Below are positions 16,201 through 62,100 of a stretch of DNA of 64,000 nucleotides, piece by piece. Below the pieces are notes generated by a model, which did no database searches, was not told the DNA's origin, and saw nothing but the letters and a program-made list of their open reading frames with translations. The first letter of the stretch is position 1. Every line of letters begins with the position of its first letter. Source of the DNA: Bugula neritina (Eukaryota; Animalia; Bryozoa); NCBI GenBank assembly GCA_964035545.1, contig OZ037769.1, positions 806,001 to 870,000 on the forward strand. The letters run 5' to 3'. A program made the position numbers and the translations under genes.

Positions 16201-19200
16201 GGCACTATCTGTGACATGTAGGGGGCGAGCTGAGCCCCAGCCTGGGCGGCTATTGTAGAGAAGCCAAAGGCCGCACCCTGGAGGAAAGTGAATTTACAGT
16301 AAAACAAAACAAAATTATCAGGTGCTTTAATTGGAAATATATTTCACAAGAAAACACAGCTAAACAAGTGCACGTGTTGGTTAAATTGAAAGAAACATGA
16401 GAAGTGAAGCAAGCAAAAGGTATATGAGTTTGTGTTGCTAATACATCTACTCATATACAGCACTGGTCAACTAGGCCACTGGTCAACCAGCCCACTGGTA
16501 AACTGGTCAACTAGCCCACTGGTAAACTAGCCCACTGATAAACTAGCCCACTGATAAACTAGCCCACTGATAAACTAGCCTACTGGTAAACTAGCCCACT
16601 GGTCAACTAGCACACTGGTCAACTAGGGCACCGGTAAACTGGCCCACTGGTCTAGCAACAATAGGACCAGTGAGTTATTCTGTTAAAACACCTTTCTGCT
16701 GTTCCACATGCTCTGGTGGTTGGCCAGGTGGAGGAACTTGTAGATGAGATCTGGTTGGTTGAGGTCTGTGGCTATAGCACACAGTTCCTTGTACGTGTTG
16801 AGTCTCTGGCCGTCGGGGGTGGAGCCCAAACTCCCCTCGCTAAATAACTTAGACTCTCCGCTAACTTCTCCACTTTTTTTCTGTGAACTATGATGAGAAG
16901 TAGAAGGCATGTGTGAGTGCACAAAAACACAAATAGATGACTAAAAGAGCGAGAAAGCAGAGATGAGAAGAGAGATCTGAGAACATCTAAGAGAACTAGG
17001 CACCTTTTACCAGTCATGAGAGTACCAACAAGGTTAGAGATCAGCTCTTTCTGTTGAACATCTCCACAGCTCTCGTAGATCAACCCCAGACCTTTAGACG
17101 CCACGTCTTGTGTAATTTCTGTACACAAAAGGATATGACATCATACGGCGCAAAACACAGCTTCCCAGATCACAAAATACAAGAATTGGGGTGATAATAG
17201 CAAGAAATAGTATGACATACGCAACAGCTGGTGATAAAGAGAAATATGAGAAGTTGAGTCACCAGATGAGACACAAACAGGAAATGACATCACACAGAGA
17301 CTTACCATCATTCTCAGAGAGAAGTCTCATGAAAGCAGACTGAATATCTGATGACCTTTTAGTGACTGCAGAGAACTTTGCTGACTTCTTGACAATGGTG
17401 AGTAACCAGACGCACGCTGCCTGCAAAGATATACCAGAATGCACTGTCAGCATCACTTCCTGTCCACCACACAGACAAGTGAGTACAGTACTGACCTGTT
17501 TAATATGTGGGTTAACGTGACATATATACTTGTCGAGCACGCAGTCGACCAAGTAGCTCATCTCATGACTCATCTCAAGCACTGAGTCATCACTCCAGTG
17601 GTCTGACTCGGACTGCCTCCATTTGTCTCTTCTGATTGGACAAGACATTCCCTGAGCAGACATGACCAGAGCCTGGCCGACAGTGAAGTGCAACTCCAAC
17701 TCCTGCAATATTACTGTATACCTCTAGTAACTGACAGTACACTACTAGTAACTGACAGTATACTAATAGTAACTGACAGTATACTACTAGTAACTGACAG
17801 TACACTACTAGTAACTGACAGTATACTAATAGTAACTGACAGTACACTACTAGTAACTGACAGCATACCTCTAGTAACTGACAGTATACCACTAGTAACT
17901 GATAGCATACTCATAGAGAGAGAGCATACCTTAGTGCTGCTACTCTCACATAGACCGTCTATGCACAGCTTCCTGAAAGGGAAAGACGGGTCACCAACAC
18001 CAATAGAGCCGAGACACGTTGCCACTTTCTCACGTTGCTAAAAGTTATGAAAAGGGAAATATTATCTACACGACACAACAACTCCTACGTTTATGAACTG
18101 ATACATTTATACCAGCTAAAGAAACACAATAGGTAGATAACAATTCAAATTCCTACGAATACAAACAAAAAATAAATAAATGCAGAGAAAGAATAATATA
18201 AAAATAATATTGAATAAAGACATCATTGCATGTTTAAAAAAGATGAAAAATCCTGAATGAAAAACCTTGGAATCCAGTTTAGCACTTTTGACGTGTTTGG
18301 AGAGAAGATTGACGATGCTGAGCACATTGACCTCTCCGTCCACATCCTCCTCACTGCCGTACTCTAAACACAGACTACCAGACACACTGATCTCTAGAAG
18401 TACTTGTAGCGCCACCGTAGCCTTAGGAATGTCATGTAGTTCTCGCTCTACAGACAGGGATAACAAAGGCTAGATTAGCTGAAAGATATAGTAACAGTAA
18501 TTGCAGGTTCAGCAAACCCTTCAGTGGGGAGGAAATAGTTTACCTATGAGCTTCACAACTTGAGCAGTGAGAGTGTACCAAGTGGCATCCTCGCCGTCCC
18601 CGTCACCTTTCAGTCTATTGTGATAAGAAATAAGGCTAGACATGGTGTAGAGTGAACCATTCTTCTGCTCGAGAGATAACTAAAACAGTTGACAGCGGAG
18701 ATTAACAGAGAATTCTAAACAAGTTGTCCAGTATTTTGAAATTATGTACTAGTAGGCACATTACTATGGATATTCCCTTCTCACTAATCACCTATAACTC
18801 TGCATCTATGACTAATCACTCATGACTAATCACTCATGACTAATCACTCATGACTCATCACCGATGACTAATCACCCATGACTAATCACCCATGACTAAT
18901 CACCTATGACTAACCACCCATGACTAATCAGCCATATCCAGCTCACAATGACTCATACTCACTGAGGGTTTGAATGCGTCGATGTACTCCTCCAACACCT
19001 TTGCTGGCGTTAGATCACAGTCTACCAGTATGAGAGCGAAGATCTGGGAGGCGTAGAACTGAACTTTATTGTCATAGTTGTTGGCAAGATTCTGGAACAG
19101 TGACTATTAGTTAGTGCTTATAGTGCTGACTTAGCATACATAGAGAAGGCAACTCTTACAATCAAACATATCTACCTTATTAATTGTACAGATGTATAAT

Positions 19201-49209: not shown

Positions 49210-50499
49210 TAACTGTCACTACCAACTTGACATCTTATCAATGATGTCTAAACCTAATCATAGATCAATTCAGTGTGTAACTGTTGCCTGTTTGTTGCTT
49301 ATTTGTTGACCTTGACATATAAAGGTTTACTCAGGTTTAACCGCGCCATTTGAATTTATCCGCTCTTTACTTTCAGTTACGATTTAGCAGCTGGTCACAC
49401 ATTATGTTAATAAATTATCACCAACTCTCAATATTTCAAGTTTTGACACAACTTCAATAGTTCAGCTTAGTTGATATGAATTGAAAACTGGCTGTAAATT
49501 GAGTTCTTTTATTTTGATAATATATTTTATATATAATATGCGTAAAATAGTAAAATAAATATAATTACACCATTGCCCTTAACTAGGGCATTAATAGAAA
49601 ATTGAATTTACAATGTTTTTGTTGAAGAGGCTATTCTGAATATTCCTGTAATAAAAATATATCAGTGGTAATAGGGGGTTAGTATCTATACAGGCTATTT
49701 CTGGCAAGACGATGCTTTCGTTTGTCTGTTTGTGTGTAGCAATTTATAGTCAAGACAATGGAAGATATGAAGGAAAGGTAATATAGTTAGCATGACTAAA
49801 AACTGTATAAGAAAAGCAAATTAGAAAAAGAGATCACGGAAAGACATAAAACATGATCTCTAAACTGGTGAACAGTTTTTCTGTTGAAAATTGTTACATA
49901 GAAAGTAAAAATATCAGTATAAAGGTAATAGATCTGTGATATATTATTTGCATAGAATAGGGTCTCTTACAAACTCAGGACAATATCAATATATAAAATG
50001 CTACGATTAAGGATATATACTAAAATATCTGATGATATTTTGAAACTGAATCGGTTTTTAGAAAATAGAATACTATTAAGAGTGTATAGCTATATAAAAT
50101 ATTGACCTAAGAATGTATTATAATATACAAGTGACTAGTATCTTATATATATTATAGTATGTATAATATATCAGCTGTAATAACTAGAGAAATAAAATGT
50201 CGCAATAGTACAGCTGAAAATATGCTATGTACGGAGTTATCTACTCGGTACTGATGAGTTACTAATAGAATATCACTATATTGACAGTGGAATGTAAGTT
50301 GATCTCAACTCAATAAGGAATGCATTAGTATCAACTATTGCACAGAGGTCACGTGATAATGTTGCATGAGATTGCAGAAATAAGCAGCAGCAGTAAGGGG
50401 AGTGCATGCGTTAACATTAGGTCTTGTGGACTGACCTAAGGCTATGCTTACAGCTCCAAACTGTGACAGCGAGATCTCTGGGAGAGAAGGTAGTAACAG

Positions 50500-53400
50500 C
50501 TAACACTGTTCAGATTTGAAGTTGGTCGAACTGGCTGTGCTCACCGGCTGGTAGTAGTAGGTGGAGCCTGTGAAATCAAAACTGTGACATCAGATTTGCT
50601 TATTTATTATTTCCAATTGTGTTTGCAACGAGGCATTTGATTGGGTGATGAAAGAGGTGTTGTACTCACCGTTGCTACTGGTGAAGTACTGATACTGATA
50701 GTTAGGGTAGAACTCCGCCCCCTCTGAGAAAGGTTGCTGCTGAGTGGTGGGGGTGATGAGAGGGGCCACCATAGTGGCTAGGGAAGGGGTGCCGGCGGTA
50801 AACTCGGTTGACGAGGCTACAACAAACATACTTCGTTAGCAGAAGAACACTACATTGATATCTTCTACTGAGATAGCACTGTGTATAGTATAGTAGAGTG
50901 ACAGAAGAGCCTGAGTTCCTACCTGACACAGCTGCATAGTTCTGCTGGGGGTGGGGTGAGTAGGCCTGAGGCAGGTTTGATATGACGGGCTTCAGCTCCG
51001 TCAGTTCGTTGACGGCCGAGTTGTCGTGGGGACTGCTCTGACGCACTTGGTTAGGGGTGGTCGCCCTACCCTCCCCGTTGTTGTTGTCGTTAGCTGGAGA
51101 ACGTTCTGAGGCTGTAAAATTATAACACCAATTTCCAAAACTATTTCAAGTGTGCAGGTGAAGTATCAACTCTACCAGCTGTTTACTCACCTATAGGACT
51201 GTAGCCACTGTGTGCGAAGTGTGCAGGGGAAGTATCAACTCTACCAGCTGTTTACTCACCTATAGGACTGTAGCCACTGTGTGCGGAGTGTGCAGGGGAA
51301 GTATCAACTCTACCAACTGTTTACTCACCTATAGGACTGTAGCCACTGTGTGCGGAGTGTGCAGGGGAAGTATCAACTCTACCGACAGACTTGCTAAGAT
51401 CTTCCACGCTAGGTAGAGGCGTAACTCTACCGGGACTGGGCTGAAGCTGAGCCTGAGGGTAATACTGTATCACGTGATAGTCGGGCTGGGTGCTCACTAC
51501 CCCTTCCCCTCCCTCCATCACTCTCTTCTTGTTGCTTGCTGGCCATGGATTCTACAACAATTAACTCATCATGAGTGAAAAACTTCATTGCATTACAGTT
51601 GAAATTTGTATCTATTTATTATAACCCTTCTATATTATTATTATATTTATATTTTTGTGTGATGTCAAATAAATTGTTCTGTGTATCCCTTATGTAACAA
51701 AATATATTATAAACATTATATTTATTGTGGAATGTCAAAAATAAATTCAACTATTCATTCAAACAGTAATTTCGGGTTAACAAGTTACTAAACCCTTTTT
51801 CATTATTCCTCAGTAAAAGTTCATAGATCTCTAAATGACGAGTTGAGATACTCACCACGATCTCTTCGCCTTTTTCATCTCTACTTTCCTCATCTGTAAA
51901 CACAAACAAACAGAAGCTGTTATCAAACATGTTTACACATTAATCTGCATATCAATAATAAAAAACATTATAAGAATCATATAACTAGCATCAAGTACAT
52001 CAACGTGGAATTTCAAGTGCTTTACGAAAGGGTGTGGGTTTGCATACTCGCATTGATCACTTGCGATATGTTATATTATTAATAAATACAGTTATTATAA
52101 TTCCTCTGACAATGTTTGATTCATTTGAGTGGGCGAGCTCAGTTATGTAGCTGGGGGAATGTATTCAGCAATGGCAAGATGGCACAGGACAAAACCGTCC
52201 CAACAGCCACTACAGTTTTATGGATTTTAGGCTATGTGCACCGAACTGGCCACTTGTAGTTAGCTTTGGTCCAACAACTGGGAATTAGATAACTGAAACT
52301 ATAGGTACATAGGCTAAAGATTTAGTACAGCAGAATCGAACCGAGTTAAGAGTCTGTGTTTACAATGCTTCTAAATATCGATAAAGAGGATATTTGTATG
52401 CATATTAGTCAAACAAGTGGAGATGTTCAACAAAATTCAGGAGTTTCTTGCAGGTTTATTGAATTTATCTGAAGACTGATGGATAATCAAGAGATAAATA
52501 CCAAGAATAGACTGTGGTGCAGATATTGGGGGGAGGCCTGAGTAAAGCCATTAGATCAACTCAGGTTCAACTGCTGACAAATTTTTTCACAATTTAATGC
52601 AACAAGCCAAACTTTTATATATTGCATTCTAAATTTTAAATCAACCATTTATAGAATTGAGATTTCTGACCAAAATGACGGTCTTTTCAGTCAAAAATAT
52701 GTTCAACATATTTATTCTTATATATTTATTATCATATATTTCTTATTACAGATGTTTATTATCTATTATCATATGTATATATCATTATGTTTATTATTTA
52801 TTACCCATTTTATTTATTGATTCAATGCCAAAAGACCTGGCAAATTTCCAGTTTTAAGTAAAACTGTTAAATAATCTACACCCCCCTCCCCCCATACGCA
52901 AAACTTGGAGCCACTTTCATATTCAACCAATCATAAGTGCGCAAACTATCCACAATATTTAGGCCAATACCAAAACAGGTAGCAAAGAAGCAGCCCATTA
53001 AAATTACAAGAAGATTAATAGAATTCAGTAGCAATTTAATAAACTTTTCATTTCTACAAATGTACCGAGAAGATTAGATAATCTCCTTGATGAGGAGAGA
53101 GTAAATGAGGTTCCAACCACTTGAGTGTGGAGCAACAAGTTCTTTTACAAGAATAACTCAATCACTACGAGTGATTAGAATGTCAGCAAGTAAGCTGTGT
53201 GCGCTTCTCCTACGGGATATGCTATATGCTATATATGCTAGTATGATATGCTATATATGCTAGTACGATATGCTAGATATGCTAGTACGATATGCTATAT
53301 ATGCTAGTATGACATGCTATATATGCTAGTATTCAATGTATTTTCATATATATGCATGTTCCTAACAAAGCAGATATTTCACCAAAAGTCCAGAGAATCG

Positions 53401-56400
53401 CCTGCATATTTCTGAGAACTATGCAGCATTATATAGCATAGTGCTATAAGACATAGCGCAGTGCTATAGCAGAATAGCGATATGGATATAACAATATAGC
53501 TATGTGCCATATTTACATTACTATTTTCGTTACTAGTTATTTCTTTCATCAATTCACTGAATTTGCTATTAAATCATTTCATCGCCAGACCCTCATCTAT
53601 CTTGAAATCAAACCAAACTCTATGATGAACAATATTCAGGTCACACAAACCATGACTCTACTTGTAGTGAACTCGGAGTGTATAGACATAGACTCGGAGT
53701 GTATAGACATAGACTCGGAGTGTATAGACATAGACTCGGAGTGTATAGATATAACTTACATTGAGTTTGCCGTTTCCTGTTGCCCATGCTCAGATCTGCA
53801 ACCTCCGAGACTATAGGCCCGGTATTATTAAGGTCCAGCACTGTGGCATTAATCGGGTCATCCTGTGCAGGAGCTCCGGGAATACTTATTATTGTACCTG
53901 CAATGCATCATGGGTATTACATAGTATTGTAGCTGCAATGCATCGTGGGTAATACATAGTATTGTAGCTGCAATGCATCCTAGGTATGGCCTACTACACT
54001 TTCAGGTACCTATAGCACTACTGGATGATGTCATTATATTATATAATACTAGCCCATCTATTCATCATTTGAAACTATCTTTTATACTCTGTCATTGTAA
54101 TATATATATTAAAATAGCATTTTTACTGCTATTACAATATTATAAATAAAATAATATTTCATATAGAAATTTAGTAACTTTAATTAGCAATTAGTAATTA
54201 ATTAACAATATTTAATATGAATTATTACAAACAGTACCTATGGTATACTGGTGACCAGGCAACTGGCTAACTGATATAATATTCGGATGTTGGAGATTAT
54301 CTCCTCCTGTAAGATTCTGTTGGGGTTGAGGAGTTGTCCTATTCATGTCCTCGCCAGGATGCTGCTGCCGGTGTGGTGATGCTCGATTTATCTTGTCTGC
54401 TGCTTTGTTGCGCACAATTCTACAATATTACATCATTGGAATACAGGGAATGCCTGGAGGTTGTGAAGAGAAGACAACTACGAGGTTTTTACACTACAAC
54501 CGGTGGGATAGCACTCAAGAAAAGATATCTTTAAGGAAAATCTAATTAAAGTTGAAGCAACAATTAAGAGAATAGATAAACATCAAACGACTTAGAGAAG
54601 GAACGGAGAGAATGTAATGATGACTTTGATAGGTGATCCAAGTGGCCAGATGTCTGTCTGTGTGTCTAGCTATAGGAGAGAATGAAGGAGAATTCACTTT
54701 ATTATAGAGCTGTTAGGGTTTCAATGAGCTGCTCTGTTTGATATGGAAGACCCTTAATTAGAGACAACTCAGGGTAATTAACAGCAGTTCAGATTACATT
54801 ACTAGCTAGATAACACCAAACCTCTCATCTCTACTTATACAACGCTGCCGACGACGTATCATGACACATCGGCGCTGACCTGTTAATAGAAGACACACTG
54901 GGAACATTCTCCTGGTCGCACACCCCGTCAGAGAGCAGCTTGTCTCGTATTTCCCAGGCAAACAGAGTCATGTTCTCTTTCTTATATTGACATATTGCAT
55001 TGACGACCTTGGGCGTGGCAACCTTAGGCTTAGAGCCACCTATTATCTTGGGACGTATGGAGCCCGTCTCGTTGAACCTGAAGTGTAGAGAAAAAGATGC
55101 TCACCTGTTGATAGAGCTCACGCTGGGTATGTTCTCCTGTGTACAAATGCTTTCGGATAACAGTCGGTCTCTGATTTCCCAGGCAAACATGGTCGGGTTT
55201 TCCTGTTTATATTTGATGATTGCATCAACTACGGAAGGTGTGGCCACCTTAGGCTTAGATCCACCAATAACACCGGGTTTGGTAGAGCCCGTCTCGAAGT
55301 ATCTGTAAGAAGGAGAGCAATGACTCAGCCCTCCTCTTCTTCCGTTATTAGTGGATACTCTGTAGCCCGGTAACCCAGGGGGAGGGGGTCCATTGCACCA
55401 CCCGCACTGTGAGTAAGTAGACAGACAGGAAGTGGGGGTCGACAGGAGAGCAACTGTTCACCGAAAGCATTTGTACAAAGGAATCAGGTACTACCTCAGT
55501 AGTATCAGGTGTAGAGGGTATACAGCGTGGTGGGGGTAACTCCAAAATGTAGTCAATACTACACAGCTTGTTACATGTTAATTAGATGTAATACATTGTT
55601 ATAGTTGGGAGTTGTACCCAGCCAGCCCGTGTGTGTTAGCTGTGTATTTATAGAATGTGTTAGTAAATAGTTAGACACAGGAAAAGGTGTTTATATACAC
55701 AGGACAATAATTCATATGAATACATAAAAGAGCAAAACAGGTAAAAACACAAACAATTTAATAAATAGAGAAAATTCTTTGAATATACATCCCAGAGGTT
55801 ATTAGAAAGGAAGACACCAATACCAATCTTGATAGGTTAAATAATTCAACTTCTGCTATCTAATGAAAAATGTCATTATAATCCAAAATGTATTCGAGAT
55901 TCCAATTACATATTATTTTGTCACTTGAGACTTCTCTCAAACAATGTCTCATTGGCTAGCGAGAAAGGTAATCAGCCAATGAGATCGCTTACCTTCTCAG
56001 CATCTCCCACGAGGAGAGAATTTTTCTTAGCCACGGAGTAGCTTAGAAATTAGAGAAAGAAGGAGGAGTGTGCGCTTACCTGCCCAGTATTTTACTGACA
56101 CAGCCGTGAGAGACCCTCAACTGTCTGCTAATATCACAGGGTCTGACCCCCTGATGAGCCAGCTCCACTATCCGCTGCCTTACTGAGTCCGGCAGCGGGC
56201 GGCCATTCACAAACATTCCACCAAGTTGATTGACTCCCCCATGACCTACAAACAAAAACCCATCAATCAGATGTAGGGTAACAGAAAATTCCCTTAGAAA
56301 CTGCCAATCACAGCGCATGTAGCAAATGTATGTTTTTCCAGCTATTGCCTCATTTTATATGACAAAATATATGCAAATATTGCGTTGAATCTACTTTCGT

Positions 56401-59137
56401 AATTTTTTGATCAAGAATTTCAAGTACTGTGGGTTAAACAACTGCATGAATAATTATGACTGATTTTGATGGAAGTAATAATTGAGTTGGTATAAACCAG
56501 CCAAGAACAGAGCACCTTTTGCCATATTACCAACATTGTATAATCACACACTAACATCAAAAGAGCCATCTATAGCATTGACAGAAAATCCGACTTTCTA
56601 TATTTTTTTAGTAAACTCAAAAGCAATGATTGAAAGAATTTTTACAAAGTGAGCACAACTAACATGGGATTTTTTGGATGACTTACTGTTAGAAGTAAGT
56701 AGATAGGTGTGTAAGTTAAATATACTGCCCTATTTGCCCGGGTATTATGTTATATATCAGTATTTTCAAATTAATTTACATCAGACAGTTAACAACTACA
56801 TTAGCATCCTGTATCTTTCACACAGCCCCATTGTAAGAGAAATTTACCTCTACAATTGTTTTCTAGTCAATTACAATGAAATAATAACAAGCAATAACAC
56901 AATATAATAACTAACTTCATTATATTAGTATTCAGAGTTGAAGATGCTTAACGCTTCGGTTGAAAATGAAAATTAATTAAAAATATCAATTTTAGTTTTT
57001 AAAAAAAGGTAATTCTGGAAAGAGATGTTGATAATTCACTACATAAGATTGAGAAATTTTCACTAATATTGTGTAACTATATTTGTAACTAGTAACTGGA
57101 TATCTATAGTGTTTGCACTGGAACACACTCTAAGATTACAGTTATATAATACTATAATATGCTTAAGCAATGTGTCAGAAACAAAATGTACTCTATCACC
57201 GAAATAGGAGGAATGTGTTGAGAATTATCTTTTTGAAAATCTCGAAATATCAACCTATCATATATTATAACTATCTATAAAAATACTTCAGTTTGAATCT
57301 TACATAAATCAGGTATTATGTAAAGAGATACGAGGGAACATTATCAACTTCATTTACAAACCGCTATTCTAGGTTCTTCATATTTGTATTTAAAAAAAGT
57401 TTAGGATGACTTTTCGGTAAGTTAAAACTCAGTCATAGAAAGAAAATTGATGATGTCATGTATATGGTGCAAAATTCATCCAATTGAAGAGGAAACTTGG
57501 CATGCGAAAGGTTAGTGTCAGTTGGTGTCGGTTAGAAGTGAGGGGGGCAAAAAGTGTATCGGTTAAAGAGTTGAGTCAGACTCAACCCTGAGTCACTTGA
57601 AATGAGCAACTTTTCTAGTTTTATGCATATAGTGACTCTTTTCAAACCAAAAATAATTCAAATCTAACAGATGGAATAAAAATAGGGTAATTTTTCAACT
57701 CCTAAAAATATTCAATTTAATTCAATTTTAGATAAAGCAGTTACTGCGTTCCTCGATCAGGGATGAAAAAAACTTTGTTTCTATAATACATATTGCGCCA
57801 ACCAATATATCCAGGATATTAATAATCGTAGGACTTCAGGAGATTCAGAACACAAATTAATAGGACGATCCATAGTCTAGGAAATTAGATTATGGATCAT
57901 GCATATCAAACCACTCAGTGTCTACCATCGCCGTCCAAACCACTTCAAATTTCAAAAATAATCCGTTAAAAATTCTTAGCAAATTTTAGGCCATATAAAA
58001 AATTGAGCTTATGTATGACCTATTAAACCAATAGGACTATCTCTACAGATTCATAAGCCTAATGGTATTTTCAAAGAGCGTAAAAACAATTTATCATGTT
58101 CAGTGCTACATCAAAAAGCCTGGCTCTACCCCCCAGATAACTAAAGGGTCCTCTAACTGACAATCATTGGAAAGCATCCATAATAATTATATGATATATA
58201 ATTTCTCATTTCATACTGAATTAATCATATTTGGAGTGATTACTCATAGACTGGCAGGGATTGGGAAGGGTTTGAAAGTGAGAAGTCAGTGGATAGATGA
58301 AAAGGAGTACTATATCACAGGATACCAGAACCCTCTGCCACCAGTCAATAGTTCGCATACGTAGAATACATCTCACAACAACAACCAACAATGTAGTACA
58401 AATACTACCTTGTCAAGTGCAATATGTATACAATTCAACGAAAGTAAATAGCAGCAAAAACGAAGAAGGAACACCCATAAAAATTAACATGCTCTGGAAA
58501 ATCTCTCACCGCAAGGGGCAATGCACTAGCAATAACAGATCAAATCACTTTTAGCAGCAAAGTAATTTATAAAGTCCAGATAATTAATACTTGAAGACAC
58601 AACAATCTAAATATACTCCAAGAGTAAAAATAGATAGCTGAAGCAGAAAAACAAGATTAACTTCTAAATCTCTAAATGCCCAAACTATTTTAATTACTAC
58701 AATCATGAAAAACAACTTAAATGTTGCAATCCACTGAACTGTTAGGAAAACATGTTAATTCCGCTTAATAACTTGGAAAATCATATATTTCTTAATTTCA
58801 ATCACCAAGAAAGGAGGAAAATAAACAACCCTGACTGCCAGTGTGTAGTTTACTCACATGATCCTGTCCTTGACATGGCATGTAAGGTGCCCGATCTTGG
58901 TAGATGTGTCATGGAGCCCATGTTGGCAGGTGACATGTGGTGGTGACTAGATGTAGCAGGTGACATGCCACCATGGTGCTGGTGATGGTGTGTGTGAGAT
59001 TGTATAGAAGAGACAGGTGGGGAGTTGTGGTAGTGATTGAGGTGGTGGTGAGGTGACGGCTGAAAGTGTGGAATACCAGGATGATGCCCGGCTGCCAGAG
59101 TGTGGTGATGTCCTGCGTACGGATGTATATCCATCAT
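50500..59137 (-). CDS. Pax2/5/8: Paired box protein Pax2/5/8; multi-exon, with a duplicated paired-domain exon
   Basis: His-rich exon 1 (59137-58859) is followed by [55 protein letters not shown] (Pax2/5/8-diagnostic Q-R-H). Then come the 198-nt RED exons, IVRNK, and a C-terminal STYYY motif with TAG at 50502-50500. Confidence 0.93.
51149..51384. repeat. 69-nt repeat (~3.4 copies) spanning a Pax2/5/8 donor site
   Basis: gtttactcacctatagg at 51181, 51250 and 51319. Confidence 0.93.
54880..55077 (-). other. Pax2/5/8: Pax2/5/8 paired-domain exon variant B (198 nt, phase 2-2)
   Basis: cag|G...AACAG|gtcagc. Translates [66 protein letters not shown], with no stops or frameshifts. Confidence 0.9.
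55105..55302 (-). other. Pax2/5/8: Pax2/5/8 paired-domain exon variant A (198 nt, phase 2-2)
   Basis: cag|A...AACAG|gtgagc. Translates [66 protein letters not shown]. Confidence 0.93.
55135..55482. repeat. Imperfect inverted repeat (arms 55135-55171 and 55446-55482)
   Basis: 32 of 37 positions are complementary, including a perfect 17-nt core: TGTACAAATGCTTTCGG (55140-55156) versus CCGAAAGCATTTGTACA (55461-55477). Confidence 0.9.
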
Positions 59138-62100
59138 GTTGAGACGAGCTGCTAATCGGTAATGACAGGGTTGACTAGGTGTCCACCAGTTATTAGATGA
59201 CTGTTGTTGGCTGCTCCACTCTACTTACACTGATCCTGCATGCTCCACTCACATACTATTATAGCATTCGTACTCTGCCTTGACTCGTCTTCACAGGCCA
59301 TTAGTCATGTGACATTAACACCAGTATCACCATAGCTACTCGTACACACAGCCTAAGCCAATATCTACACATCCCCTGCATATATCCCCTGCATACGAAG
59401 GCCTTGTTGTAAGCTGATCTTATCACATCATATTTCTAACAGCGGATTCTTCTATCTTTTCGTGTTCTTCACAGAAAATTATGATCCACAATTATTAGCG
59501 CTGAATTCTAGTGTTGGATATAACAGGGGTTCCCAGTGGTGGAAGTATAAATACTTTATTTTGTTCAAACTGCACAACAGTTAAAGTAAATGCAAAAATT
59601 TTAGAAAAAGAAAAAATATCACAACATAGAAAATACATTAATATAAGAATGATTTCATTTTTTTAAAAAGCTTGCCACTGTGAAGTGTGGAGTTGACCAA
59701 CGACTTTCAAGATTGTGGCAATGTAAGAGTAACTAATGTCTTCTAAAACATGCATTAATATTACAGCTAAAAAATTGTTTTAATAGTAAAATGTAAATGA
59801 ATTTCTGGAACTTATAATAGTATATTAGCCATCAGATTCCATTCATATCGAGACAGCATAAATATGTTTGATGAGTAATTCAATCAGAACATTTTCTTAT
59901 GTATTATTTAAAGCTAAATCTTATTATATTTACATTATATTTTATTATATCACATTATATTCATATTATATTATATTAGATTATATTCCTATTATATCAC
60001 ATCATAATAATATTATATTACATTACATCTATAATATATTATAATATTATATTATATTCCTTGACATTAGATAAAAGCAGGAAAGTTGAATTCAAACCTT
60101 CGCCCACCCTTCCCACATTCCACAAGGTGGGTCACTCAGTATCTCCTGCCAAGTCAATAGACAGATAAATATATAACTCAGTCACCCCAGCCAACTATTT
60201 TCAGGAAAAATTTAGGGTAAACATAAATAGAGAGGAGCAGGCGCCAGGTTGATAAATCACCTTCACCTAGATTTCTCATGTTATGGCCATTTGACGTGGC
60301 TTATTTGGAGTCGTCTTCTATTCTACCAGATGATTGTAGACACCATTCATTAAAATTATGTATATAAACTGCAGGGTAAGATGTTTGGTTAGTCATTTTA
60401 AACTAAACCTTCTTTGAAAAATTATGAAAATTTCCATTCTTACCAGAATACTTATTCAATATAACTAAGACTGGTTTGATTGATATAGATTGCATTTTTA
60501 AAAACTTTCGACAGAAAAATACACAATTTTCCTATATAATCAACTTGCTCCTACCCCTGCACTATACCCCCTGTCCTACACCCCCTCCTGTACTACACCC
60601 CCCTGTACTACACCCCCTGTACTACACCCCCCTGTACTACACCCCCTGTACTACACCCCTTGTACCACACTTTGACACAATAGTATTTAGCATAGAATGA
60701 TTTCATAAGCTGAGAGGTTCCTCCAAAAACATTCAGATATTTTACACTTTCTCCAGCTACTATTACATAATTAGTGTAAAAAACTAGCTTGAAGATTTTA
60801 CAATTTAATGAAATGTTACTTACATCTACATAAAAACAACACATGCTGGTGATTACAGTAACTCTAGTATGAGGCAATATGTGATATTCAAGATTATGCA
60901 ACAGGTTTATGACATCAACCAACACCACATATCACACATGTATACAACATGTTGCATGTGTTTATACACATACATGTTGGTGTTTACACACATACATGTT
61001 GGTGTTTACACACAGAGTGTGTAAACACCCAGTGAAGCATTCTCTCAACATGTTCATGTAACATTGTAAAATATACATCAAATAATTAAATAATGTATGA
61101 AAAGTTTTTGAACAAAAATAATTAAGGTTAATAGTTGAAACTTTTCAAGTTACCAAAAGTTGTCTGCCCTGACAAGGCTCCCAAACTCGCGTATATTAAT
61201 GACTAGAAACTGAGGCTAAAAGTAACAATTCTATAAATAAATGAAATAAGTGCAGGGTATCTCCGTGACATAATGAGGAATATTTTTAAGCCAAAAGTTG
61301 GCCACATTTCAAGTAATTACCACATCACAGGGACAGAAAAAGGAAATCAACATATTATTACCAGTTATGTTGAGTGGAGATTCAAAGCAACTTGAGTTCG
61401 ATTAATTATTGGCTTAAAACAGTTGGGATACTTTCACCAGGTTTAAATATCTACAGTCAGGATGAATGACTAATTAGAAAAACTTTCAACAAATAGCTTC
61501 TATTAAAATGTTGCAAGAAATGCCTTGCATGTTCCAAAAAGTAATGTTTTGTTATATAAGTGAGTGGGCGTTAGATTGCCTTTATGATGTAGAGATAAGT
61601 ATATAGTAAGTGTATAGTAAGTGTAGAGTAGGTGTATAGTAAGTGTATAGTAAGTGTATAGTAAGTGTAGAGTATGTAATGAGTAAGTATATAGTAGGTG
61701 TATAGTAAGTGTAGAGTAAGTTTATAGTAAGTGTATAGTAAGTGTAAGGGTAAGTGTAGTGAAATAAACTACTGGTAGCAGATCAGCAGAAAACTGTCAT
61801 CACTGAATTTCGTAAAAAAACTGATTTTCATTTCAACTAGCGAAAAGTTAGTCTGAAAAAATGCAAACTGTTCCCTTTGAACTCTACACTATATTATGTT
61901 ATTTGTGGAGAGTACACACTGAGAGATGTGACATCATGTGCAGGTCTAGCTGTCTACCAACGGCAACCATTGCCAGGTGCTCCAAGTAGTCTAGCAATAG
62001 ATGAAGCTTAAAATAAATATAAAGGGTGGTCACCCTACGTCCCAACTTACTCTGACACTAGTGTAACTAGGGTAGCACTAGCTAATTGCAAACTAGTTTG

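What the first reader, a model, noticed from the sequence alone, without database searches (positions are those of the whole stretch)
54880..55302. Pax2/5/8 carries two mutually exclusive exons for the paired-domain linker + RED subdomain
Seen: two 198-nt, phase 2-2 exons (A 55302-55105, B 55077-54880) each encode the second half of the paired domain. They are separated by a 27-nt spacer (gtgagcatctttttctctacacttcag). Both keep the frame and invariant residues despite heavy synonymous divergence, so the duplication is old and both copies look constrained. Knowledge: 27 nt is below the usual minimum spliceable metazoan intron, and steric clash is a known route to mutual exclusivity. Retaining the spacer gives AGG-TGA (stop). 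The variants differ in the DNA minor-groove linker ([10 protein letters not shown] vs [10 protein letters not shown], the latter closer to Pax6 IRPRAIGGS) and in NPTMF vs NMTLF. Inference: one gene makes two transcription factors with different DNA-binding behaviour. I do not recall this arrangement for Pax2/5/8 but cannot search the literature.
Basis: partly seen in the sequence, partly recalled or inferred. Interest (0 to 1): 0.9.

Follow-up and report, generated by a model that had tools for sequence, protein, structure and literature searches.

The report
Ancient swappable exons in Pax2/5/8
A moss animal's Pax2/5/8 developmental gene builds the second half of its DNA-binding domain from one of two alternative exons; the same pair occurs in ribbon worms, other marine invertebrates and a crab, and in moss animals a conserved RNA pairing probably steers the choice.

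Summary
Confirmed and extended. The genome is the bryozoan Bugula neritina. Two 198-nt exons (A, B), 27 nt apart, each encode paired-domain residues 57-121 of Pax2/5/8. RNA contigs show all four single-exon joints (U>A, U>B, A>D, B>D) and none that removes the spacer. One run shows A+spacer+B, which ends in a stop, so exclusivity is leaky. The pair is intact in six further bryozoan-like lineages at saturated synonymous distance, in the nemertean Tubulanus, in many unidentified invertebrate contigs (same order; spacers mostly 25-81 nt) and in a decapod (opposite order). Trees group exons by position; separate duplication in every spiralian lineage is rejected (AU p 0.003, only 65 columns). An upstream intron element (55482-55446) pairs with exon A (55171-55135) in 7 of 7 bryozoan-like lineages, with compensatory changes, and encloses A's acceptor. 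An earlier scan note flagged this pairing in this window; no note reports the exon pair on other DNA. Different DNA binding is untested: the recognition helix is identical. The three Pax papers I searched do not describe the pair; RefSeq lists both nemertean isoforms without comment.

The parts
54880..55077 (-). Exon B: alternative linker + RED exon (paired-domain residues 57-121; K66, K79, C85, M92, D110)
   Evidence: RNA joints U>B (X4) and B>D (X3, X4)
55078..55104 (-). 27-nt spacer: donor of A and acceptor of B; no joint removes it; retained in one RNA contig; retention gives an immediate stop
   Evidence: (X3 record 8)
55105..55302 (-). Exon A: alternative linker + RED exon (G66, S79, I85, Q89, T110, I114)
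   Evidence: RNA joints U>A (X3, X4) and A>D (X1, X4, X5)
55135..55171 (-). Exonic arm of the conserved RNA duplex (codons around L-L-S-E-S-I-C-T-Q); codons 106-108 identical in six lineages
55446..55482 (-). Intronic arm of the duplex (core 10-mer at 55473-55464); 37 nt, 86% complementary to exon A, 274-nt loop containing A's acceptor
56080..56245 (-). Shared upstream exon U: PAI subdomain (Q42, R44, H47, Pax2/5/8 type)
54238..54419 (-). Shared downstream exon D: end of the recognition helix (IVRNK) and first half of an octapeptide-like motif
53760..53897 (-). Exon E: rest of the octapeptide-like motif and the basic NRKR signal
   Evidence: RNA joint 53893-54234 (cut +4)
58858..59137 (-). One first coding exon (His-rich N-terminus); a second first exon lies just beyond the window end (G000:C5:870294-870051)
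50499..51893 (-). Five predicted C-terminal exons; with either A or B the model is an open frame of 542 aa
   Evidence: predicted from sequence; only the joint into 51893 is seen in RNA

Best explanation
The Bugula Pax2/5/8 gene carries an old tandem duplicate of the linker + RED exon and makes two 542-aa proteins that differ at 19 paired-domain residues (shown: joints, frames, conservation). A cannot be spliced to B because the 27-nt spacer is too short and holds both A's donor and, probably, B's branch point, so the two sites compete (absence of the joint shown; mechanism inferred from known steric interference). If A's acceptor is used with B's donor, the spacer is kept and a stop follows A (form seen in one run; decay by NMD inferred). 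In bryozoans an upstream intron element pairs with the 3' third of exon A and loops out A's acceptor; folded, it should favour B, unfolded A (pairing and covariation shown; effect inferred). The pair most likely arose once, early in Spiralia, B keeping the outgroup-like residues (C85, D110) and A diverging; brachiopod, oyster and flatworm single exons are A-like, which suggests loss of B. The isoforms probably differ modestly in site affinity or partner contacts (linker K66 vs G66; surface of RED), not in core sequence recognition (inferred).
For: RNA: joints U>A, U>B, A>D, B>D; clean two-path bubble in run X4; no A>B or U>D joint. Conservation: A then B, both intact, in six further bryozoan-like lineages; synonymous sites mostly saturated, dN 0.01-0.12; 16 fixed A/B differences. 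Tubulanus RefSeq isoforms X1/X2 differ only in this exon; genomic spacer 58 nt. About 30 further paired loci in metagenome contigs. 32 of 36 distinct spacers are 81 nt or shorter; all 35 spiralian-type ones give a stop on retention. Duplex: z -4.4 for the region; upstream-intron:A pairing z -4.4 to -14 in 7 of 7 lineages, upstream:B not; A-U/G-C exchange at the Cys109 third base, 3 lineages each; the L021 element is rewritten yet pairs with the same part of A. Tree and AU tests. Steric limits: PMC5740500 (<50 nt donor to branch point), PMC4165533 (introns <40 nt). In-loop exon suppression: PMC4691838.
Against: RNA evidence is from assembled contigs, not reads: no isoform ratios, tissues or phasing; three of the four runs are 90-99% identical, so from a sister lineage. 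Run X3 shows no A>D joint and X1 no B contig. Some spacers (213-359 nt) are long enough to splice. No upstream duplex outside bryozoans. The alignment has 65 columns; tests on single lineages do not reject local duplication (p 0.06). Taxa of the metagenome contigs are not given. No binding data.
Confidence: 0.8

Rival explanations
1. The switch mainly controls protein dose: use of A's acceptor often yields A+spacer+B with a premature stop (decay, or a truncated paired-domain-only protein), and the two full isoforms are near-equivalent.
For: X3 has the retention contig and no A>D joint. The donor after the first exon gives an immediate stop in 14 of 14 lineages, the donor after the second fits the same GTRA pattern in 8 of 14 (Fisher p 0.016, lineages not fully independent).
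Against: A>D is seen in three runs; A and B each keep their own residues over saturated distances, which is expected if both proteins matter. GTRA is also simply the strong donor consensus; the decapod spacer has no immediate stop.
Confidence: 0.25
2. The duplex is a guide for A-to-I editing that recodes exon A (codons 107-108, S and I, would read as G and V, the residues of B and of most Pax2/5/8), rather than a splicing switch.
For: A long near-perfect duplex covers exactly these codons, which are invariant in six lineages; L021 has N107, also one or two A-to-G steps from G.
Against: The X5 contig over 55105-55215 shows no difference from the genome; no excess of T>C over other changes in any run. 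S or N at 107 also occur in animals without the duplex.
Confidence: 0.15
3. The exon was duplicated several times independently (bryozoans, nemerteans, annelid-like animals, crustaceans) because it is a symmetric phase 2-2 module; similarities by position are convergent.
For: Exon order is opposite in the decapod; single-lineage clades are not rejected; an all-arthropod clade is not rejected (p 0.27). Lingula, oysters, chelicerates and insects have one type in all annotated isoforms examined.
Against: Joint independence of the spiralian pairs is rejected (p 0.0003 and 0.003); first exons share Q89, S/T110, I114 and second exons C85, K/R89, D110, E112, V114 across most lineages. Independent origin remains quite likely for the decapod pair alone.
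Confidence: 0.2
4. One exon is a decaying pseudo-exon or an assembly artefact.
For: None; B contigs are missing in X1, but the tool warns that holes prove nothing.
Against: Both exons intact with splice sites in all lineages, spliced in RNA, present in independent assemblies.
Confidence: 0.02

Closest known systems
Mutually exclusive homologous exons with too-short intervening introns (C. elegans egl-15 5B/5A, let-2 9/10, bet-2 3a/3b; 9% of human clusters) - PMC4165533, PMC5740500
   Same: Tandem homologous exons of equal 3n length; intervening intron below spliceable size; double inclusion only with the spacer retained.
   Different: Here in a Pax paired domain, kept across several phyla, and combined with an intron-exon duplex.
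Drosophila serpent exon 4.1/4.2 and Dscam clusters, RNA-pairing control - PMC4691838
   Same: Transcription-factor exon pair; long-range pairing with compensatory evolution that encloses an alternative exon or its acceptor.
   Different: Only one pairing found here (no competing partner for B in bryozoans), and its second arm lies inside the coding exon; no mutational test.
Known paired-domain splice variants: Pax6(5a), Pax8(S), medaka Pax2.1(2a+), amphioxus variants - PMC4488758
   Same: Alternative splicing alters the paired domain.
   Different: Those are insertions, shifted donors or skips that disable PAI; here a whole intact linker + RED is exchanged for a paralogous one.
FOXP1 exon 18/18b and MEF2 alpha1/alpha2 (from memory, not checked here)
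   Same: Mutually exclusive exons in a developmental transcription factor; FOXP1's change DNA-binding preference.
   Different: Different domains; function shown there, untested here.
RefSeq isoforms X1/X2 of Tubulanus polymorphus LOC141903911 (XP_074648388.1, XP_074648389.1)
   Same: Same two-exon arrangement, same order, automatically annotated as two isoforms.
   Different: Database record only; exons less diverged (12 differences); no upstream duplex, a possible B-downstream duplex instead.

Membership tests
Pax2/5/8 | Complete paired domain with Q42, R44, H47 in PAI | tested here: met
   Exon U reads [10 protein letters not shown]; Pfam PAX on U, A, B; the genome's Pax6 is a separate locus. 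Residue rule recalled from Czerny and Busslinger 1995, paper not held.
Pax2/5/8 | Octapeptide followed by a basic KR signal; no homeodomain in lophotrochozoans (PMC5333810) | tested here: met
   Degenerate YTIGTIIS across exons D/E, then NRKR; a homeodomain was not searched for in the last five exons.
Mutually exclusive exon cluster | Homologous exons, same length and phase, same part of the protein | tested here: met
Mutually exclusive exon cluster | Each exon joined singly to the same flanking exons in RNA | tested here: met
   four joints
Mutually exclusive exon cluster | No spliced double inclusion and no double skipping | tested here: inconclusive
   No A>B or U>D joint, but contigs drop rare forms; unspliced double inclusion (spacer retained) is present in X3.
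Mutually exclusive exon cluster | Regulated (tissue or stage) choice | not testable with these tools
   Runs differ in which joints appear, but contig depth cannot rank forms.
RNA-pairing-controlled exon choice (serpent/Dscam type) | Conserved complementarity with compensatory changes | tested here: met
RNA-pairing-controlled exon choice (serpent/Dscam type) | Competing pairings (one docker, several selectors) | tested here: not met
   No significant upstream:B, downstream:A or downstream:B pairing in bryozoan-like loci; no other long inverted repeat in 54400-56100.
RNA-pairing-controlled exon choice (serpent/Dscam type) | Disruptive and compensatory mutations change and restore exon choice | not testable with these tools
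   needs a minigene
ADAR editing-complementary sequence | A-to-G differences in RNA inside the duplex | tested here: inconclusive
   None in the X5 contig (depth 2.8); the difference list for other runs was cut.

The most novel reading that the evidence does not exclude
The protostome ancestor already had two alternative linker + RED exons in Pax2/5/8; bryozoans, nemerteans, annelid-like worms and decapods keep both, while insects, chelicerates, brachiopods and bivalves each kept one, which would explain their different paired-domain types. The choice switches target genes and, in bryozoans, is set by an intron-exon RNA duplex.
Probability: 0.25. Interest if true: 0.88.

Novelty: new variant of a known kind. 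Interest (0 to 1): 0.72.

Why it matters
Pax2/5/8 is a core regulator of brain, sensory and excretory development, and is treated as one protein in invertebrate studies. If many protostomes make two paired domains from one gene, expression studies, probes and phylogenies based on one isoform have mixed or missed a variable. Exon-level duplication would stand in for the gene duplications that gave vertebrates Pax2, 5 and 8. The compact cassette (423 nt plus a 37-bp duplex with natural compensatory variants) is an easy model for how RNA structure and steric clash select an exon, and two natural paired domains allow a direct test of what the linker and RED surface contribute.

Tried and rejected
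Bryozoan-only novelty: dropped. Pseudo-exon or artefact: rejected. Known RNA family in the region: none in Rfam. Competing docker/selector pairs in bryozoans: not found. The 10-mer as a protein-binding motif shared by all paired loci: exact matches only in bryozoan-like loci, explained by pairing. A promoter scan was irrelevant. One AU run timed out. Lingula genomic locus not on record. Xu 1999 and Czerny 1995 not held. Ten paper searches, seven aimed at Pax splicing or Pax in these animals, found no description of a duplicated RED exon; subscription journals are not covered. As the operators asked, the spliced model was searched exon by exon; the joined protein was not sent to any search or folding tool, so no structure of the two paired domains was predicted. 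Nine vertebrate-like contigs (L077, L082, L083, L086, L090-L093, L095), which may include human DNA, were filtered out and not compared further.

Full report
Observation. On the minus strand, exon A (55302-55105) and exon B (55077-54880) are each 198 nt, bounded by AG and GT, and separated by 27 nt. They share 134 of 198 nt and 46 of 65 residues, and each matches positions 57-121 of Pfam PAX, the linker and RED subdomain. The upstream exon U (56245-56080) encodes PAI; the downstream exon D starts at 54419. A ten-exon model gives an open frame of 542 aa with either A or B (the last exons are predicted from sequence). The genome has 216,009,554 bases, exactly the length of the Bugula neritina assembly tzBugNeri2.1 (PMC11480708). 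The gene is Pax2/5/8 by its PAI residues, octapeptide-like motif and basic signal; Pax6 is a separate locus.

RNA evidence. Contigs of four public runs from four studies were laid on 53600-59450. Joints: U>A (X3, X4), U>B (X4), A>D (X1, X4, X5), B>D (X3, X4). In X4, A and B form two parallel contigs between the same neighbours. No joint removes the spacer and none skips both exons. In X3, one contig runs from U (spliced) through A and the intact spacer into B, and no A>D joint is listed; this form stops directly after A. These are contigs: they show presence, not amounts, and drop rare forms. X1, X3 and X4 are mostly 90-99% identical to the window, so from a sister lineage; the X5 pieces are identical. 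X3 and X4 use another first exon, found just beyond the window.

Conservation in bryozoan-like animals. Orthologues of B led to contigs of five further lineages, and a sixth came later (L104). All have A then B, 198 nt each, with spacers of 56, 48, 27, 45, 25 and 25 nt. Synonymous sites are mostly saturated while dN is 0.01-0.12; identity is 52-64/65 among A, 61-63/65 among B and 42-46/65 between A and B, with 16 fixed differences (six lineages).

Wider distribution. A 250-kb contig of an unidentified animal (L029) has the same pair with a 61-nt spacer. In the nemertean Tubulanus polymorphus two RefSeq isoforms differ only in this exon, and the genome has the A-like exon first, with a 58-nt spacer. 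A scan of metagenome contigs gave about 30 further paired loci from at least five kinds of invertebrate, probably annelids (contig names recalled from memory as marine-worm samples; not verified), again A-like first. The decapod Petrolisthes has two 198-nt exons 47 nt apart, but with the D110 type first; a crayfish model also holds both. Annotated isoforms of Lingula, two oysters, five chelicerates plus a sea spider and a mayfly show one type only, and some genomic loci have a single exon within 5-8 kb (L030, L100, L111). Of 36 distinct spacers, 32 are 81 nt or shorter and four are 213-359 nt.

History. In a tree of 44 exons (65 columns, weak support) spiralian exons group by position, apart from one long branch; Lingula, oyster and flatworm single exons fall with A; decapod exon 1 falls with chelicerate and branchiopod-like exons and exon 2 with the insect type. 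Forcing every spiralian-type lineage to have its own duplication is rejected (AU p 0.0003; 0.003 without the long-branch group), position clades are not (p about 0.4). Tests on single lineages are not significant, nor is an all-arthropod clade (p 0.27). One early spiralian duplication with later losses is the best reading (about 0.7); common origin with the decapod pair is open (about 0.3).

A conserved RNA duplex. Aligning the intron upstream of A showed a 10-mer shared by six of seven bryozoan-like lineages, 159-269 nt before A. Its reverse complement lies in exon A. The arms are 55482-55446 and 55171-55135, 37 nt, 86% complementary, with a 274-nt loop that contains A's acceptor; the region folds at z -4.4. 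All seven lineages have an upstream-intron:A duplex on the same part of A (z -4.4 to -14, 15 shuffles each), none has one with B. Codons 106-108 are identical in six lineages, against one identical codon in the whole of B; the third base of Cys109 pairs A-U in three lineages and G-C in three; the seventh lineage has a different element that pairs perfectly over 15 nt. An earlier first-stage note (s1-456937) flagged the same pairing in this window; the covariation is tested here. No such upstream duplex was found outside bryozoans; Tubulanus has a mirror-image candidate between B and its downstream intron.

Mechanism. Shown: single use of each exon, no splicing of the spacer, a retention form with a stop, and a duplex kept by compensatory change. 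Inferred: 27 nt is below the limits reported for steric interference (under 50 nt from donor to branch point, PMC5740500; introns under 40 nt, PMC4165533). Adenosines at the usual branch distance (21 and 24 nt before B) lie in or next to A's donor, so U1 at A and U2 at B should exclude each other. Pairing that encloses an exon suppresses it in serpent and Dscam (PMC4691838), so the folded state should favour B. The retention form is a likely NMD target. Editing of the duplex is a weaker rival: the one contig that can be read shows no change.

Protein consequence. The linker binds the minor groove and the two subdomains the major groove (PMC2995082, PMC4330359). A and B share PAI and the recognition helix. 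Bryozoan B has K66, where Pax6 has R and Pax2/5/8 G, plus H/N58, M92 and L94; a separate worm group has R66 and V92 in its first exon, an apparent convergence that hints at selection on this position. A modest change in affinity, site preference or partners is more likely than a new consensus. This is untested.

Comparison and novelty. Mutually exclusive duplicated exons, steric exclusion and RNA-pairing control are known. Reviews of Pax2/5/8 splicing and of lophotrochozoan Pax genes describe insertions, shifted donors, skips and N-terminal variants, but term searches and the sections read show no duplicated RED exon (PMC4488758, PMC5333810, PMC4625944). Only open literature could be searched. 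I rate it a new variant of a known kind, interest 0.72: surprising for Pax and evo-devo specialists because of its age and spread, and directly testable.

Limits.

Noticed in passing
G000:C5:870294-870051 (L005 1742-1499, minus strand; just beyond window end): A second first coding exon (81 codons, phase 1) spliced to exon U in runs X3 and X4; the His-rich first exon at 59137-58858 is the alternative. Two promoters are likely.
   Followed up: partly
window 51148-51383: 69-nt tandem repeat (3.4 copies, 98%) that copies the 3' end of a coding exon together with its donor site, giving several possible donors or mini-exons.
   Followed up: no
window 53883-53987: 35-nt tandem repeat (3 copies) that overlaps the acceptor of exon E; each copy holds a similar AG context.
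   Followed up: no
L031 18711-18741 with 18910-18940 (Tubulanus): Exon B pairs with its downstream intron (31 nt, 81%; above all 150 shuffles), a mirror image of the bryozoan duplex; one species only.
   Followed up: partly
L038-L070 (metagenome contigs): A large group of related worm-like loci whose first exon is strongly diverged (D59, R66, R78, V92, V120) while the second is conservative; the reverse of the bryozoan pattern for the linker.
   Followed up: partly
P0002 (Idotea baltica, flagged as possible contamination): Gene model with a short first linker segment followed by a full second exon; may be a broken or intron-split first exon.
   Followed up: no
G000: The PAX family search found only two loci in the genome (this gene and Pax6); a lower bound, since few candidates were scored.
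   Followed up: no
L003 1500-1680: In Bugula Pax6 the RED exon ends six codons earlier (before VSSIN) and is single.
   Followed up: no
window 55105-56107, run X1: A contig with A spliced to D while the U-A intron is kept; fits late removal of the intron that carries the duplex, but this run may contain DNA.
   Followed up: no
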